This document shows, in pieces, positions 2-20,241 of a stretch of 23,666 bases of DNA. How positions within the stretch are numbered: the stretch's first letter is position 1; each line of letters starts with the position of its first letter. Both the position numbers and the translations under genes were made by a program. The stretch lies in the sequence record NC_074632.1, one strand, 5' to 3'. A model generated the notes under the pieces. The model did no database searches. It was not told the origin of the DNA and was given only the letters and a program-made list of their open reading frames with translations.

Positions 2-212
2 ACTTTTTTTCATGATAAATGAAATATTTTGAATTACAAAATTACAATAAATCTCAGATTGTTGAGAAGTACTAATTAAGGGAGTAATATAGGAATATAT
101 AATATATAGCGAACGGTAGGAATTTAACGACGTTGAGAAAAATTCAAGACGTTAATTTTTCCTACCATTCGGCACCGAACTATCTGAGATATATAAATCT
201 TCATGAAAAAGT
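2..212. repeat. Nested imperfect inverted repeats at the left genome end
   Basis: TTTTTCATGA 6-15 / TCATGAAAAA 201-210; ATCTCAGAT 51-59 / ATCTGAGAT 182-190; GAACGGTAGGAA 111-122 / TTCCTACCATTC 159-170 (11/12); TTAACG 124-129 / CGTTAA 150-155. Confidence 0.6.
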
Positions 213-838: not shown

Positions 839-868
839 ATGAATATTCCTAATATGCAGCATATGGAT
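839..868. promoter_or_regulatory. 30-bp pseudo-palindromic operator-like motif, degenerate copy
   Basis: ATGAATATTCCTAATATGCAGCATATGGAT; direct repeat of 935-964. Confidence 0.5.
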
Positions 869-905
869 ATTGGTATTGTTTTTGATAGGTGGCAGTCACA
901 TAGTA

Positions 906-931
906 ACTTCGTTCGGAACTACGTTCCTCAC
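906..931. repeat. Hairpin element copy 1
   Basis: ACTTCGTTC-GGAAC-TAC-GTTCC-TCAC. Confidence 0.9.
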
Positions 932-934
932 AGT

Positions 935-964
935 ATGAATATTCCTAATATTAATCATATGGAT
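935..964. promoter_or_regulatory. 30-bp pseudo-palindromic operator-like motif
   Basis: ATGAATATTCCTAATATTAATCATATGGAT; about 25/30 to consensus ACTCATATWCCTWATATTAATAATATGAAT. Confidence 0.6.
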
Positions 965-984
965 TGTGTAAGGGGGTTTGTTAT

Positions 985-1012
985 TGAAATCAAGATAGAA
1001 AGATTTAAATAG
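985..1012 (+). promoter_or_regulatory. Early promoter (purine-rich BRE + TATA)
   Basis: TGAAATCAAGATAGAAAGATTTAAATAG, just upstream of ORF 1039. Confidence 0.8.
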
Positions 1013-2551: not shown

Positions 2552-3022
2552 CTATTTTTGATTTTCATCTTTTTTCTTCTTTTTGAACATGTATTCTATC
2601 ACTTTTTTTATTGTTTTATCGTCAAAATTTAATATCTCAAAATGTAAATAGTATGATTTTCTAAATTTTTTCTGTACTTCTTTGTAATCAATTCGTTGAT
2701 TTGTTGCAATTAAGCGGTGATAATGCAATTTATGTTTTTCTCCTTTTTCAGCAATTGAGAATATTTCGGCATTGTAATTTTTATGCAAATATTCTCTTGG
2801 TGGTAGATATATTTCGTCAGTATTTTCTGTGCTTATTTCGATTTTTTTTGTTGTTTCGTTCGGAGCTTCGCTCCTCACTTTAGGTTTTATTGTTTCTGTC
2901 ATAAAATAGAGATATTTATAATTTTCAGCTTTGCTAAGAAATTCTTTTAATTTTTTTGCAGTTGACGTTGAAATATTGTATTTCAGTAAAATCTCTGCGA
3001 TAATGATTTCTTGATTTAGCAT
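2552..3022 (-). CDS. rep: HUH-superfamily replication initiator (rudiviral Rep, SIRV1 ORF119-like)
   Basis: Motif I-like YFMT, HUH motif II LHYHRLI, motif III EYMFK (YxxK); sits near the RHH and SSB genes as in SIRVs. Confidence 0.8.
   Translation of the reverse strand: MLNQEIIIAEILLKYNISTSTAKKLKEFLSKAENYKYLYFMTETIKPKVRSEAPNETTKKIEISTENTDEIYLPPREYLHKNYNAEIFSIAEKGEKHKLHYHRLIATNQRIDYKEVQKKFRKSYYLHFEILNFDDKTIKKVIEYMFKKKKKDENQK
2853..2878. repeat. Hairpin element copy 2 (inside rep)
   Basis: GTTTCGTTC-GGAGC-TTC-GCTCC-TCAC. Confidence 0.9.
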
Positions 3023-4388: not shown

Positions 4389-4414
4389 ACTACGTTCGGA
4401 GCTTCGCTCCTCAC
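4389..4414. repeat. Hairpin element copy 3
   Basis: ACTACGTTC-GGAGC-TTC-GCTCC-TCAC. Confidence 0.9.
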
Positions 4415-4426
4415 TCAATTTTCAAT

Positions 4427-4456
4427 ACAAATATTCCTTATATTATTTATATGTAT
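4427..4456. promoter_or_regulatory. 30-bp operator-like motif upstream of the ATPase gene
   Basis: ACAAATATTCCTTATATTATTTATATGTAT, about 25/30 to consensus. Confidence 0.55.
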
Positions 4457-4517
4457 ATTTTCATTCAATTTTACGTGAAAGAGAAGCTTAAAATATGTTG
4501 ACTCCAACGATTTACGT

Positions 4518-6549: not shown

Positions 6550-6879
6550 ATGGAGAATAAATTCGCTGATTGGAATAAATATAGAAGGCAAGTTAATCAA
6601 GTTATTTTGGAATATTTCAACGAAACTGGTGTGCCGTTAGCGTTGAGATCTTTATATTTTTCATTTGGGCAAAAAATATTGTCAATTGTAAAAAGACAAA
6701 AAGATAAAAATATTATAGATAAATTAGTTGAGGCAAATATTTGCTATTTTTCAAAAGGTTTTGACGCAAATGAAAGAGTATTAAGAGATATTGTAAAAAT
6801 TATATTTTTAATGAAAATTGAGAATAAAAAACCAGATGAAGTTTTGAAAGAGATTTTTACGGATAAAGCTAACCACTAA
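6550..6879 (+). CDS. Probable truncated paralogue of the major capsid protein
   Basis: 16/59 ungapped identities to MCP residues 67-125 of this genome. Confidence 0.7.
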   Translation: MENKFADWNKYRRQVNQVILEYFNETGVPLALRSLYFSFGQKILSIVKRQKDKNIIDKLVEANICYFSKGFDANERVLRDIVKIIFLMKIENKKPDEVLKEIFTDKANH

Positions 6880-6980
6880 TATACCTTATATTAATAATAT
6901 GAATATTGTGTAATTTTGATGTTTTGTTGTAAACATGCATATACATAATATTAGGTATATGCAATTTTCGTATTCAATTT
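6875..6980 (+). promoter_or_regulatory. 106-bp late regulatory module upstream of MCP
   Basis: 30-mer 6875-6904, near-perfect palindrome GCATATACATAATATTAGGTATATGC 6937-6962, CGTATTCAATTT 6969-6980; colinear with 13211-13316. Confidence 0.75.
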
Positions 6981-9698: not shown

Positions 9699-9736
9699 AA
9701 TTAAAAATGTTGTGTAATAGACTTATAAATGTCATC

Positions 9737-9786
9737 GTGATGCGCAAAGCGCAGAACGTAGTGAGGTGCGTAGCACCGAACGTAGT
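9737..9786. repeat. Hairpin element copies 4 and 5 in tandem (reverse orientation, 24-bp period)
   Basis: Reverse complement reads ACTACGTTC-GGTGC-TAC-GCACC-TC|ACTACGTTC-TGCGC-TTT-GCGCA-TCAC. Confidence 0.9.
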
Positions 9787-9873
9787 GCTAGTTAGGTCTT
9801 TTAAATTTCAGTGGAAATATATTTATTATGGTGAGACATTACGAGTTTTGATAATATTTTTGGACCGGTCAGA

Positions 9874-10191
9874 TTGATAATCGATAAATTGAAAGAATTG
9901 GAAATGAGGGGTGAGGCTTACGGTTTTTCCCAATATTTGTCACAGGCAATAATTTTATTCAGGACGACAGACAATGGCGCAATATACCAAATATTCATTC
10001 CTAATTTTAGTTATTATTTTGAATTTCTTGTTGAAAAAGATCCAAAAACAAAAGCGCCTATGGTTTCAGATTATAGAATTATTTATCCTGCGCCTGTGAA
10101 GATTTCAGATAGTCAAATTATGAAAGAATTAATACAAGATTATCTTCAATTTCAAGCGATGCAGATGCAGGGTAGCGGTCAAAATGAGTGA
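9874..10191 (+). CDS. Hypothetical protein
   Basis: 105-aa ORF (TTG start, or the internal ATG of MRGEAY); stop overlaps the next start. Confidence 0.7.
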   Translation: MIIDKLKELEMRGEAYGFSQYLSQAIILFRTTDNGAIYQIFIPNFSYYFEFLVEKDPKTKAPMVSDYRIIYPAPVKISDSQIMKELIQDYLQFQAMQMQGSGQNE

Positions 10192-10639: not shown

Positions 10640-11153
10640 CTTTTTTCACCTCGTTTTTCGTTTTTTTGTCTTTTTCGTTTACTTCGTTCGGCACTACGTG
10701 CCTCACATTTAAATATTTTACAAAAACTGGCGTATTTGTTCTAGGCGTGTCTCCGACATATTCAAATCCTGAATTTTTATATAATGCATTTGAATGATTT
10801 GGAAAACCTAAAGTCCACAGCACTTCAATTTCATATGATTTCAGTAAATCAGATAATTTTTCAAGAAATTCTACAAGGTAATCGCCTGGGGCAGTTTTCG
10901 TAACCCTTCTAATAAAATACGATCTGTCAATTGGAATTTTGAATTTTTCTGCAACAAATCTGAATGGAATTGAATCGTTGATCCACGCAATTGCAACGAT
11001 GTAATTATCGCATTGATATGTAAAATATTTCTGGATTTTTGACGCTCCACCGCCTTGCGTTATGCCTTGAGCATGATATTTTGCAATTAGCAATCGTGAT
11101 AATTCAATATCTTTCTTATCCTGAAGTTCAACTATTTTGCATTCTTCCGCCAT
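10632..11153 (-). CDS. GNAT-family acetyltransferase
   Basis: FIRRVTK...YLVEFLEKL...EVLWTLG...NHSNALYKNSGFEYVG matches GNAT motifs A and B. Confidence 0.7.
   Translation of the reverse strand: MAEECKIVELQDKKDIELSRLLIAKYHAQGITQGGGASKIQKYFTYQCDNYIVAIAWINDSIPFRFVAEKFKIPIDRSYFIRRVTKTAPGDYLVEFLEKLSDLLKSYEIEVLWTLGFPNHSNALYKNSGFEYVGDTPRTNTPVFVKYLNVRHVVPNEVNEKDKKTKNEVKKDE
10681..10706. repeat. Hairpin element copy 6 (inside the GNAT 3-prime end)
   Basis: ACTTCGTTC-GGCAC-TAC-GTGCC-TCAC. Confidence 0.9.
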
Positions 11154-13156: not shown

Positions 13157-13210
13157 TCTTCATCTATGTATTATTTCTCTTATTGCCACTTTTATTGCTC
13201 AATTTTCAAC

Positions 13211-13316
13211 ACTCATATTCCTTATATTAATAATATGAATGTTGCCGATACTTTTACGTGGTTTAGAAACATTATTATACCTAATATTAGGTATAATGAT
13301 ATTGCGTATTGAATTT
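13211..13316 (+). promoter_or_regulatory. 106-bp regulatory module between divergent genes
   Basis: 30-mer 13211-13240, perfect 24-bp palindrome ATTATACCTAATATTAGGTATAAT 13274-13297, CGTATTGAATTT 13305-13316. Confidence 0.75.
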
Positions 13317-15421: not shown

Positions 15422-15427
15422 TGCAAT

Positions 15428-15457
15428 ATTCATATTATATATATAAGGTATATGAGT
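15428..15457. promoter_or_regulatory. 30-bp operator-like motif (reverse orientation) upstream of the largest structural gene
   Basis: ATTCATATTATATATATAAGGTATATGAGT, 27/30 to 20085-20114. Confidence 0.7.
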
Positions 15458-15517
15458 GTACTATTTTGTGCAATTGAATAAATAAGAATAATGTTTACAA
15501 ATAATGTATGATATAAT

Positions 15518-18866: not shown

Positions 18867-20078
18867 ATGGCAACACCTCTTAATCACGTATCGTCAAACA
18901 ACGTCATTTCGTCATCTGCATGGAACCAGGCAATCTCCGATTTGGAATATATTTATAGTGAATATCAAACAATTCTAAATACTATACAACAACTGCAAAA
19001 TATCAACAGCCAAATTACGGCATCAAATTATCAGACTGAGGCAACTGACGCATGTAACGCCATTCAAAATCTTTTCAATTATTTACAAAGCCCAACATTA
19101 TTATCATCTTTCCCTGATTATATTACAAATATCCCGCCTGCCGTTACTGGGGGCGTATTATTTGCGTCTATGATGAATTCTTTGACATATGCGGTAGAAA
19201 AATTGTATAATTCAATAATGCCAAAGCCCGCACCGCAAATTTCAACAGTTGCTGGCGGAGATATAGTAACTGCAAGACATTGGAATAAAATCGTGGATAC
19301 AATAAATACATTATTAAATTTATTTTCACCAACAATTTTTGCAAACAGATATACAACAATAAATGTAAATTTTCCTTTTATATTTCTATATTTGAATGAA
19401 TCTGGTGTATCGGTCAACACTGATGGTCCAATAAACACAATGTTCATCACTGGCGTAACACAACAAACATATCTAGAATATTATTTTTACGGTCCAAATC
19501 CAATTACAAATTTATTTTTATGCGCAGAAACAAGTGAGGGTGCGTCATACAACAATATGTTTATCCAAAACATATATATATATCAACAAAATACATATTA
19601 CTATTTTCTTGATAATTCTGTTACACAAAATGTATATGCATATAATGAGGATATATATTTGGTTGAAGAAAATAATGCATATGTACAAAATGCATATATA
19701 TACGGCGCTTATGCAGAAATTGAAACATATGACAATGCAATTGCAGACAATATATATACATACGGATACAAATCAGCCGTTTATGTAGAGAATTCCTCTA
19801 CGGTTAATAATATATATGTATATGCCGATTACGGATACCTATACGTCTACGATTACGCAACTGTGGAAAACATATATGTTTTCGGAAATGAAGGAATAGT
19901 TGAAGCATCTTCTCCAGCGATAGTTCAAAATTTATATTTATGTGGCGGAGATAATTCAATATTTCCATATAACGTAATAAATCTTTATTTATGCAATTCT
20001 AATAATTATATATCTGGAGGATCTCCAAATATAATAACTGATTCTTCTGTCTGCAACCAAATATGCGGTTCAAATTGA
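18867..20078 (+). CDS. Putative fibre/adhesin with C-terminal beta-solenoid
   Basis: N-terminal WN motifs; seven exact 20-aa-period xxNxYxY repeats (19563-19982). Confidence 0.65.
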   Translation: MATPLNHVSSNNVISSSAWNQAISDLEYIYSEYQTILNTIQQLQNINSQITASNYQTEATDACNAIQNLFNYLQSPTLLSSFPDYITNIPPAVTGGVLFASMMNSLTYAVEKLYNSIMPKPAPQISTVAGGDIVTARHWNKIVDTINTLLNLFSPTIFANRYTTINVNFPFIFLYLNESGVSVNTDGPINTMFITGVTQQTYLEYYFYGPNPITNLFLCAETSEGASYNNMFIQNIYIYQQNTYYYFLDNSVTQNVYAYNEDIYLVEENNAYVQNAYIYGAYAEIETYDNAIADNIYTYGYKSAVYVENSSTVNNIYVYADYGYLYVYDYATVENIYVFGNEGIVEASSPAIVQNLYLCGGDNSIFPYNVINLYLCNSNNYISGGSPNIITDSSVCNQICGSN

Positions 20079-20084
20079 TTAAGT

Positions 20085-20180
20085 ATTCATATTATTAATA
20101 TTAGGTATATGAGTACTGGATATTTTTCGCTCAGAATCAAAAAATTTGTCTGCAACATTCCTATATATTATATAAGGAAT
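20085..20180. promoter_or_regulatory. Paired operator-like motifs upstream of the methyltransferase-GT operon
   Basis: ATTCATATTATTAATATTAGGTATATGAGT 20085-20114 and near-palindrome ATTCCTATATATTATATAAGGAAT 20157-20180. Confidence 0.65.
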
Positions 20181-20241
20181 ATTAGCATTCAGAATTGTTA
20201 ATGAATTTGCTTTTTAAAATGTTTACACAAAGAATATCATT

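What the first reader, a model, noticed from the sequence alone, without database searches (positions are those of the whole stretch)
2552..3022. HUH Rep plus dispersed hairpins: a possible REP/RAYT-like system in an archaeal virus
Seen: a single-Tyr HUH protein (LHYH, YMFK) of 156 aa, longer than the ~119-aa SIRV Rep. It has an N-terminal extension of about 35 aa and carries one of the hairpins in its own gene. Established: rudiviral Rep is structurally akin to IS200/IS605 TnpA. Those enzymes and TnpA-REP (RAYT) recognise short ssDNA hairpins with fixed flanking tetranucleotides. Here the hairpin has fixed flanks (GTGA on one side, GAACGWAGT on the other, containing GTAG in some copies). Inference: Rep may recognise and spread these hairpins, or use them as internal origins.
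Basis: inference. Interest (0 to 1): 0.62.

Follow-up and report, generated by a model that had tools for sequence, protein, structure and literature searches.

The report
Tiny hairpin inserts in rudivirus genes
The replication-starter gene of an archaeal rod-shaped virus carries, without being broken, one copy of a 24-letter heat-stable DNA hairpin that has been inserted at several places in this virus and a few relatives; it looks like an undescribed, extremely small insertion element, and whether this replication protein moves it is untested.

Summary
The window is the complete genome of Acidianus rod-shaped virus 3. ORF 2552-3022(-) is a genuine rudiviral HUH Rep of the SIRV1 ORF119 family. 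The record annotates it only as "hypothetical".

The hairpins are real. There are six copies of a 24-nt cassette, GTGA-5 nt-GNA/AAA-5 nt'-GAAC-GNN. All are perfectly paired and the stems covary.

New here: the cassettes are insertion polymorphisms.
- They are exact 24-nt in-frame insertions in Rep and in the acetyltransferase, compared with the closest relatives.
- Similar insertions of 48, 60 and 24 nt sit in other conserved genes of MRV1 and of SIRV-like metagenomic rudiviruses.
- They are absent from most rudiviruses, and from 47 Sulfolobaceae and 121 Sulfolobales genomes searched.
- The unit equals two quanta of the known, unexplained rudiviral "12-bp indels".
- The N-terminal "extension" of Rep is shared with hairpin-free relatives.

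The "spreading hairpins" idea is therefore supported. Rep as the mover, a REP/RAYT relationship and internal origins remain untested inference, and the defining REP/RAYT features are not met.

I found no note of them on other DNA.

The parts
2552..3022 (-). ARV3_gp06, a rudiviral HUH Rep (156 aa; HUH at residues 100-102, Tyr144)
   Evidence: (PF21578)
2855..2878 (-). Hairpin cassette hp2 (stem GGAGC, loop GAA) inside Rep, on the sense strand. It encodes about 8 extra residues in a disordered linker.
   Evidence: Exact 24-nt insertion compared with ARV2, SSRV1 and MRV1. 9-aa gap in the protein alignment. AF2 pLDDT is below 50 for residues 50-69.
908..931 (-). Hairpin cassette hp1 (stem GGAAC, loop GTA), between two operator-like AT-rich palindromes upstream of gp02. 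It lies inside the doubtful ORF gp01.
4391..4414 (-). Hairpin cassette hp3 (identical core to hp2), intergenic between gp10 and gp11. It abuts the operator-like repeat upstream of gp11.
   Evidence: Absent at this place in ARV2, SSRV1 and MRV1.
9737..9760 (+). Hairpin cassette hp4a (stem TGCGC, loop AAA), the first of a tandem pair between the divergent gp17 and gp18 promoters.
   Evidence: A hot-spring metagenome variant replaces 9730-9815 with 38 unrelated nt.
9761..9784 (+). Hairpin cassette hp4b (stem GGTGC, loop GTA), the second tandem unit (period 24 nt).
10683..10706 (-). Hairpin cassette hp5 (stem GGCAC, loop GTA) inside gp21 acetyltransferase, on the sense strand. It encodes RHVVPNEV in the C-terminal tail.
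   Evidence: Exact 24-nt insertion compared with ARV2, SSRV1 and MRV1. Metagenome contigs break at 10706 and lack it.

Best explanation
gp06 is the virus's ordinary HUH replication initiator. The hairpin in it is one of six copies of a 24-nt cassette.

On one strand only, the cassette folds into a 9-bp DNA hairpin. This consists of a 5-bp Watson-Crick stem, a C-GNA-G 'mini-hairpin' tip, and the GTGA/GAAC flanks pairing as G-C, T-A plus two sheared G.A pairs.

The cassette behaves as a minute non-autonomous insertion element of rudiviruses. It has been pasted, singly or in tandem, into promoter-upstream spacers and, in frame, into disordered or terminal parts of conserved proteins.

Shown: its structure, covariation, insertion polymorphism, virus-restricted distribution and fit to the 12-bp indel quantum.

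Inferred (about 0.55 that it is an actively moved or copied cassette):
- It moves through the abundant single-stranded replication intermediates of rudiviruses, where only such a heat-stable hairpin would stay folded at 75-80 C.
- Copies survive only if they keep the reading frame and the 12-bp register.

Inferred more weakly (about 0.2): the nick-and-join activity of Rep cuts at the cassette borders and reinserts it, in the manner of IS200/IS605 or REP/RAYT enzymes.
For: Rep identity.

Hairpin statistics:
- 6/6 paired in the window; 5 pattern matches against 0 in shuffles.
- ARV3 has 10 GC-rich 5-bp/3-nt hairpins against 2.1 expected.
- Across 11 units, 55/55 cells are paired. Four of five pairs change on both sides, there are no wobble pairs, and 0/500 shuffles reach this.

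Flanks are part of the helix: one allele has GTGA...TCAC, fully paired.

Insertions:
- Rep and acetyltransferase carry exactly 24 nt.
- MRV1 gp19 carries 48 nt, i.e. two units.
- A methyltransferase-like gene of three SIRV-like contigs carries 60 nt (36+24), against 9 aligned relatives without it; about 30 further homologues in IMG/VR have match lengths with no room for it.
- A second acetyltransferase site carries 24 nt.
- An SSRV1 gp04 variant exists.

Signs of copying:
- The same stem recurs at different loci and in different viruses. GGCAC is found in ARV3 gp21, MRV1 gp19 and L265; GGAGC occurs twice in ARV3.
- Three different stems sit at one orthologous site with identical flanks.

Distribution:
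- No paired copy in 47 Sulfolobaceae or 121 Sulfolobales genomes.
- Only one of about 25 other rudiviral loci had a copy by the strict pattern.

Context:
- Indel lengths in this clade are quantised: 12 x30, 24 x10, 36 x6, 48 x4, 60 x6, against 15 x3 and 18/27/30/33 x0. 12-bp indels are a known rudiviral feature (PMC4390879).
- ssDNA intermediates in rudiviruses: PMC5062984.
- d(GCGNAGC) has a Tm of 76.5 C: PMC13037366.
Against: - There is no conserved target sequence and no target-site duplication at the insertion points.
- Only about 16 units are known in all, and no insertion or excision has been observed directly.
- Rep is present in many rudiviruses without any cassette, so Rep alone does not generate them.
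- Flank microhomology could move stems by recombination without a dedicated enzyme.
- The same flank-hairpin-flank motif recurs in unrelated bacteria and DPANN archaea. The conserved letters may therefore reflect thermodynamic optimisation rather than common descent.
- One copy (L311) has an unpaired stem position.
Confidence: 0.55

Rival explanations
1. The cassettes are functional cis-elements of replication. They would be single-strand initiation signals where second-strand priming starts on displaced ssDNA, or secondary Rep entry sites, spread by recombination because they are useful.
For: GCGNAGC mini-hairpins mark priming sites of G4/St-1/alpha3 phages, ssiA of RSF1010 and N4 hairpin promoters, and they exclude SSB (PMC13037366). 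Rudiviruses make long ssDNA intermediates whose conversion to duplex is unexplained (PMC5062984). The strand asymmetry of the fold (GNA loop and G.A pairs on one strand only) fits a single-strand signal.
Against: They are absent from most rudiviruses, including ARV2, the SIRVs and ARV1, so they are not required. Positions inside protein-coding loops and the variable copy number look accidental. The strand of the motif is not uniform along the genome (-,-,-,+,+,-). A 3-nt loop has no room for a nick site.
Confidence: 0.15
2. There is no dedicated mobility. The hairpins are one sequence class within the general, mechanistically unknown 12-bp-quantised indel process of rudiviruses. They are shuffled between sites by microhomology recombination and retained because they are harmless.
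For: There is a strong excess of 12/24/36/48/60-nt gaps among ARV3, ARV2, SSRV1 and MRV1, and most of these are not hairpins. A plain 12-nt indel lies 8 nt from hp5. Units share 11-nt identical junctions that could support ectopic conversion.
Against: This does not explain why a specific 24-nt sequence with fixed termini recurs at unrelated sites that contain neither arm beforehand. It also does not explain tandem arrays at three loci, or a perfect palindrome being kept through 15 double changes.
Confidence: 0.15
3. The hairpin acts at the RNA level, for example in mRNA stabilisation, processing or termination.
For: All coding-region copies (Rep, gp21, MRV1 gp19, SSRV1 gp04, the methyltransferase and second acetyltransferase sites) are on the sense strand. 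Tandem G.A plus a triloop is also a stable RNA motif.
Against: No G-U pair occurs among 15 covarying cells. hp1 and hp3 lie upstream of promoters on the strand not expected to be transcribed. No Rfam family matches. No RNA run holding this sequence was found.
Confidence: 0.05

Closest known systems
SIRV1 ORF119 Rep (PDB 2X3G; Pfam PF21578), the rudiviral HUH initiator
   Same: HUH motif, a single Tyr on the last helix, and the fold (Z 11.8, 110 residues aligned). It sits in a syntenic position next to small RHH regulators in the Italian rudiviruses.
   Different: It is about 37 aa longer. There is an extra N-terminal helix and a basic linker, both shared with ARV1, ARV2, SSRV1 and MRV1. An ARV3-only 8-9 aa segment is encoded by the hairpin cassette.
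Bacterial REP elements and their RAYT (TnpA-REP) transposases
   Same: A short palindromic unit has a fixed 5' tetranucleotide beginning GT (GTGA here, GTAG/GTGG in REPs), it is dispersed, and an HUH single-Tyr enzyme is encoded in the same genome.
   Different: The enzyme is not an IS200/TnpA relative by sequence. There are six copies rather than hundreds. Some copies are intragenic and in frame. Arrays are direct tandems rather than inverted doublets. The gene is not bracketed by the repeats. Stems vary between copies.
IS200/IS605 peel-and-paste transposition
   Same: It is a conceivable mode of action: ssDNA hairpins cut at their feet by an HUH enzyme, with no terminal inverted repeats and no target duplication.
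   Different: There is no transposase inside the unit, no left/right end pair, and no fixed target tetranucleotide at the six-plus insertion sites.
12-bp indels of rudiviruses and lipothrixviruses (reviewed in PMC4390879)
   Same: The length is a multiple of 12, the indels lie within ORFs without breaking the frame, and they vary between close relatives. The quantisation was confirmed in this clade.
   Different: Those indels are described there only by length and location. Here a defined 24-nt hairpin sequence recurs at unrelated sites.
d(GCGNAGC) mini-hairpin DNA and single-strand initiation signals (PMC13037366)
   Same: The exact GCGAAGC/GCGTAGC core occurs in hp2, hp3 and hp4b, with the C-GNA-G tip in two more. 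The ssDNA-rich replication mode also matches.
   Different: No priming function is shown. Here the hairpin is extended by flanks with tandem G.A pairs and behaves as an indel.

Membership tests
Rudiviral Rep (SIRV1 ORF119 family, PF21578) | HUH metal-binding motif on the central strand | tested here: met
   H100-Y-H102 aligns with the HYH of 2x3g and is invariant in 6 homologues. It lies on strand 99-107 of the model.
Rudiviral Rep (SIRV1 ORF119 family, PF21578) | Single catalytic Tyr on the C-terminal helix | tested here: met
   Y144 aligns with chain residue 108 of 2x3g, is invariant, and lies on helix 135-145. That Tyr108 is the catalytic residue is from my own knowledge of Oke et al. 2011.
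Rudiviral Rep (SIRV1 ORF119 family, PF21578) | Fold match to the solved structure | tested here: met
   Foldseek E=1.6e-6, prob 1.0. VIA-align Z=11.8, rmsd 3.6 A over 110 residues; the next hit has Z 6.9.
Rudiviral Rep (SIRV1 ORF119 family, PF21578) | Site-specific ssDNA nicking and joining | not testable with these tools
   This needs biochemistry. The primary paper was not held.
REP/RAYT system | Enzyme is an IS200/IS605-TnpA-type Y1 transposase | tested here: not met
   No NCBIfam hit to transpos_IS200 or any transposase at E<=1. No TnpA or RAYT among the top 50 structural neighbours in two searches, although an unlisted family is not excluded.
REP/RAYT system | Palindrome preceded by a conserved GTAG/GTGG tetranucleotide | tested here: inconclusive
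   An invariant GTGA precedes every stem. GTAG itself occurs only in the 3' flank (GAACGTAGT) of 3 of the 6 units.
REP/RAYT system | Many extragenic copies, typically as inverted pairs, with the transposase gene flanked by them | tested here: not met
   There are six copies, two inside genes. The only array is a direct tandem. The nearest copies outside the Rep gene lie about 1.6 kb beyond one end and about 1.4 kb beyond the other, in the same orientation.
IS200/IS605-like element | Insertion next to a fixed tetra- or pentanucleotide target; distinct left and right end hairpins | tested here: not met
   The 8 nt upstream of the units share no motif. There is a single symmetric hairpin per unit.
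MITE | Terminal inverted repeats plus target-site duplication | tested here: not met
   Filled and empty sites were compared in Rep, gp21 and MRV1 gp19. There is no duplication beyond an ambiguous GT.
Rudiviral 12-bp indels | Indel length a multiple of 12 bp, in frame within ORFs | tested here: met
   Insertions of 24, 24, 48, 60 and 24 nt. Clade-wide gap spectrum.
d(GCGNAGC) mini-hairpin DNA | GC-closed GNA triloop sequence | tested here: met
   Exact in hp2, hp3, hp4b and MRV1 unit b. There is an A-T second pair in hp1 and hp5, and an AAA loop in hp4a.
d(GCGNAGC) mini-hairpin DNA | Exceptional thermal stability | not testable with these tools
   The nearest-neighbour model gives only -3.1 to -4.5 kcal/mol at 37 C and does not include the special loop or G.A terms. 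Melting curves are needed.

The most novel reading that the evidence does not exclude
A virus-encoded ssDNA nick-and-join enzyme (Rep is the obvious candidate) cuts and pastes 24-nt heat-stable mini-hairpin cassettes in rudivirus genomes. This would be the smallest transposable unit described. The activity would also be one source of the 12-bp-quantised indels of rudi- and lipothrixviruses, which have gone unexplained for two decades. Their quantum matches the 12 bp of DNA held by each capsid-protein dimer.
Probability: 0.15. Interest if true: 0.85.

Novelty: new variant of a known kind. Interest (0 to 1): 0.6.

Why it matters
Rudiviruses are the model for archaeal virus replication. Their genomes change by peculiar 12-bp-step indels whose mechanism has never been found.

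A defined, recurrent 24-nt hairpin that appears as such an indel gives that question a concrete substrate to test. Does Rep, or another viral nuclease, cut and rejoin it?

It also shows that conserved viral proteins, including the replication initiator itself, tolerate in-frame invasion by a DNA structural element. It offers a natural thermostable DNA hairpin module for study at 80 C.

For annotation: gp06 should be named Rep, and gp01 is probably not a gene.

Tried and rejected
- **Known RNA family:** none found over the units in the window or in 15 other motif-bearing loci, at Rfam gathering and E<=1 thresholds.
- **Host repeat:** rejected. Pattern matches in one Acidianus genome, 121 genomes of the order and all 47 genomes of the family stay at control level, and none is a paired hairpin.
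- **Fold-back or local duplication origin:** rejected. Empty sites in relatives contain neither arm.
- **Target-site duplication or fixed target:** none found.
- **Co-occurrence with the long Rep form:** rejected.
- **Special TnpA likeness of the Rep fold:** not recovered. After 2x3g, the neighbours are generic ferredoxin-like folds and CRESS or plasmid Rep domains at Z about 5.
- **Short-query BLAST of the tandem unit against 50,697 phage records:** only ARV3 itself.
- **IMG/VR pattern scan:** only singletons in unrelated phages.
- **Comparison with the mapped SIRV1 Rep nick site:** not possible, because the paper is not held. The ARV1 terminus shows no obvious likeness to the unit, and ARV3 lacks its terminal repeats.
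- **IS200-type transposase in five unrelated genomes that carry the motif:** none above cut-off.
- **Reads:** only assembled contigs of three metagenome runs were available, so rare alleles could not be counted.

Full report
**What the window and the ORF are.** The 23,666-nt window is identical to the complete genome record of Acidianus rod-shaped virus 3 (ARV3, Rudiviridae, Hoswirudivirus). The ORF at 2552-3022(-) is ARV3_gp06, annotated "hypothetical protein".
- It matches SIRV1 ORF119, the structurally solved rudiviral Rep. The phmmer E-value against PDB 2x3g is 1.8e-6, with the query's HYH on the chain's HYH and Y144 on chain residue 108.
- It matches phrog_7769 at E=7e-38 and carries Pfam PF21578.
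- An AlphaFold2 model has mean pLDDT 80. It shows helices 4-14 and 19-32, strand 37-45 and a disordered stretch (pLDDT below 50 at residues 50-69). A ferredoxin-like HUH core follows, with HUH on strand 99-107 and Tyr144 on helix 135-145.
- The best structural neighbour is 2x3g: Foldseek E=1.6e-6 and VIA-align Z=11.8 over 110 residues.
- After that come generic ferredoxin-like folds and CRESS or plasmid Rep domains at Z about 5. No IS200/IS605 TnpA or RAYT is in the top 50 of either search. NCBIfam gives no transposase hit at E<=1.

The protein is therefore a normal member of the rudiviral Rep family. The N-terminal helices and linker that make it longer than the 119-aa SIRV protein are shared with ARV1, ARV2, SSRV1 and MRV1.

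**The hairpins.** Every occurrence of GTGA-N13-GAAC in the window (six, both strands) has a perfectly paired 5-bp stem and a 3-nt loop. A stricter 21-nt pattern finds five copies, against none in 100 shuffles.
- The unit is 24 nt, GTGA-stem-loop-stem'-GAAC-GNN. This is shown by the tandem pair at 9737-9784 and by a tandem pair in MRV1, both with period 24.
- ARV3 has ten GC-rich 5-bp/3-nt hairpins where a first-order model gives 2.1. Six of them are this element.
- I aligned eleven units from ARV3, MRV1, SSRV1 and two metagenomic contigs. All 55 stem cells pair. Four of five pairs show changes on both sides (15 cells). No wobble pair occurs. None of 500 column shuffles reaches this, and slid registers fall to 25-44% paired.
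- The flanks extend the helix as G-C, T-A and then two G.A/A.G oppositions. In one allele (L250) the 3' flank is TCAC, which makes all four positions Watson-Crick.
- The loops are mostly GNA closed by C-G, and three ARV3 units contain the exact heptamer GCGAAGC or GCGTAGC. This is the "mini-hairpin DNA" reviewed in PMC13037366. [quoted passage not shown]
- The stabilising features (GNA loop, G.A pairs in a pyrimidine-GA-purine context) exist on one strand only. That context rule is from my own knowledge.
- The standard nearest-neighbour model, which lacks these terms, gives only -3 to -4.5 kcal/mol.
- The absence of any wobble pair, together with these DNA-typical features, points to a DNA-level rather than an RNA-level structure. 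This is inference.

**They are insertions.** The evidence comes from several genes and several viruses.
- Rep: ARV3 has exactly 24 extra nucleotides compared with ARV2, SSRV1 and MRV1. These appear as a 9-residue gap in the protein alignment, inside the disordered linker.
- Acetyltransferase gp21 (85-89% identical to its homologues): the C-terminal tail has exactly 24 extra nucleotides encoding RHVVPNEV.
- MRV1 gp19: two tandem units (48 nt, 16 residues) are absent from the ARV3, SSRV1, ARV2 and ARV1 orthologues.
- SSRV1 gp04: a variant unit with different flanks appears as a 24/36-nt indel.
- A methyltransferase-like gene of SIRV-like viruses: three contigs (L262, L250, L265) carry a 60-nt insertion. 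It consists of a 36-nt unit with the same termini plus a 24-nt unit, and nine aligned relatives lack it. About 30 further homologues in IMG/VR have match lengths that leave no room for it.
- At that one site the 24-nt unit has three different stems, while the flanks are identical. The 36-nt unit shows an A-T to G-C swap of its closing pair.
- A second acetyltransferase site in two metagenomic alleles holds another 24-nt hairpin. One of these has an unpaired stem position.
- The same stem recurs at unrelated places. GGCAC is found in ARV3 gp21, MRV1 gp19 and L265. GGAGC occurs in ARV3 Rep and in the gp10/gp11 spacer.
- Empty sites contain neither arm, so the units were imported rather than made by local fold-back.
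- Contigs of a hot-spring metagenome show further variation. One relative replaces both hp4 units with 38 other letters. Other relatives lack hp5. One junction places a unit start after position 10169 (these are contigs only, so weak evidence).

**Distribution.**
- ARV2 and ARV1 have none, and SSRV1 has only the variant.
- About 25 further rudiviral loci totalling 435 kb, including SIRV1, SIRV2 and SIRV3-11, gave a single copy by the strict pattern.
- The units are not a host repeat. One Acidianus genome, 121 genomes of the host order and all 47 genomes held for the host family gave pattern matches at control level, and none was a paired hairpin.
- Rep is present in every rudiviral locus that covers its region, and most of those have no hairpin.

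**Link to the 12-bp indels.** Pairwise alignments among ARV3, ARV2, SSRV1 and MRV1 give gap lengths of 12 (30 times), 24 (10), 36 (6), 48 (4) and 60 (6). By contrast, 15 occurs 3 times, 21 occurs 7 times, and 18, 27, 30 and 33 never occur.
- This is the "12 bp indel" behaviour reported for rudiviruses and lipothrixviruses (PMC4390879).
- Most such indels here are not hairpins. The cassette (2x12; one 3x12 unit) obeys the same quantum.
- In the related lipothrixvirus AFV1, each capsid-protein dimer repeat holds 12 bp of DNA (PMC5517147).
- That the quantum reflects the capsid register is my speculation.

**Placement.** All coding copies lie on the sense strand and in disordered, terminal or loop regions. 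The three intergenic sites sit just upstream of promoter modules.
- hp4 lies between the TATA-like boxes of the divergent gp17 and gp18 genes.
- hp1 and hp3 abut an AT-rich palindromic repeat that precedes many ARV3 genes.
- The strand of the motif along the genome is -,-,-,+,+,-.

**Most likely mechanism.**
- Shown: a strand-asymmetric, covarying, heat-stable hairpin cassette that is an insertion polymorphism restricted (within this host-virus system) to rudiviruses.
- Inferred: it is copied or moved via the long ssDNA intermediates of rudiviral strand-displacement replication (PMC5062984). Survivors are those that preserve the frame and the 12-bp step.
- The mover is unknown. Rep is the only HUH-type nick-and-join enzyme that I recognise among the proteins common to these viruses, and it acts on ssDNA. 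I give it about 0.2.
- Ectopic conversion through the 11-nt identical junctions, or the general indel machinery, are live alternatives.
- A role as priming signals is attractive by analogy with G4/ssiA mini-hairpins, but it is hard to square with their absence from most rudiviruses.

**Comparison with known systems.** The anatomy recalls REP elements: a fixed GT-tetranucleotide, a palindrome, and an HUH enzyme in the same genome. It also recalls IS200/IS605 chemistry. The defining features of both were tested and are not met (see the membership table). The unit fits the definition of rudiviral 12-bp-multiple indels and of mini-hairpin DNA. The ARV3 description paper does not mention hairpins (0 occurrences), and my literature searches found no description of such an element.

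**A wider observation, only partly followed up.** Of 127 matches, 108 were fully paired.
- DPANN archaea: the motif lies upstream of genes, between a TATA-like box and the start codon, with several copies per contig.
- One Kiritimatiellaeota genome: 42 copies at the tip of a longer palindrome.
- It also occurs in gammaproteobacteria, haloarchaea and spirochaetes.
- Five such genomes have no IS200-type transposase above cut-off, and Rfam has no family for it.

Either this exact flank-hairpin-flank is a physically optimal module found repeatedly, or it is a widespread mobile unit. This cuts both ways for the rudiviral case.

**Verdict.** The element appears undescribed. It is best classed as a new variant of small palindromic insertion elements and of the rudiviral 12-bp indels.

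Noticed in passing
L117-L236 (genome-contig hits), G155-G159: The same GTGAGG-NNC-GNA-GNN-CCGAACG hairpin recurs across unrelated prokaryotes; 108 of 127 matches are fully paired. In DPANN archaea it lies between a TATA-like box and gene starts. In one Kiritimatiellaeota MAG there are 42 copies at the tip of a roughly 70-nt palindrome. It also occurs in gammaproteobacteria, haloarchaea and Treponema/Prevotella. There is no Rfam family for it and no IS200 transposase in five such genomes.
   Followed up: partly
ARV3/ARV2/SSRV1/MRV1 whole genomes (L001-L004): Indel lengths are strongly quantised in multiples of 12 nt: 12 x30, 24 x10, 36 x6, 48 x4, 60 x6, against almost no other multiples of 3 at or above 15. 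The quantum equals the 12 bp of DNA per capsid-protein dimer reported for AFV1 (PMC5517147). A causal link is my speculation.
   Followed up: partly
window 839-1012 (+): The annotated ORF gp01 (57 aa) consists of two copies of the AT-rich operator-like palindrome with hairpin hp1 between them, so it is probably not a gene.
   Followed up: no
window 839-983, 4416-4459, 6862-6980, 13194-13316, 15423-15474, 20070-20197: A family of AT-rich pseudo-palindromic repeats (core ATATTCCTWATATTA...CATATG) precedes many genes. It is a likely operator or promoter module, and hp1 and hp3 sit directly beside copies.
   Followed up: no
window 108-182: There is a long inverted repeat (GAACGGTAGGAA ... TTCCTACCATTC) near the left end, followed by GGCACCGAAC. 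That sequence resembles half of a hairpin unit joined to its 3' flank, so it may be a remnant, or it may be chance.
   Followed up: no
window 2855-2900 (Rep residues 45-66) and homologues P0002-P0005: The relatives' Rep linker is strongly basic (runs of K/R). In ARV3 it is interrupted by the hairpin-encoded segment and is much less basic. The effect on DNA binding is unknown.
   Followed up: no
L128:6340-6515, L219:2650-2828: In two gammaproteobacterial genomes the hairpin is preceded by a sequence that looks like the reverse complement of a tRNA 3' end, and a tRNA gene lies about 60 nt away. This hints at attachment-site scars of integrative elements.
   Followed up: no
window 10659-10670: A plain 12-nt indel is present in ARV3 and SSRV1 and absent from ARV2 and MRV1. 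It lies in an A-rich, locally repetitive stretch and sits 8 nt from hairpin hp5 in the acetyltransferase tail.
   Followed up: partly
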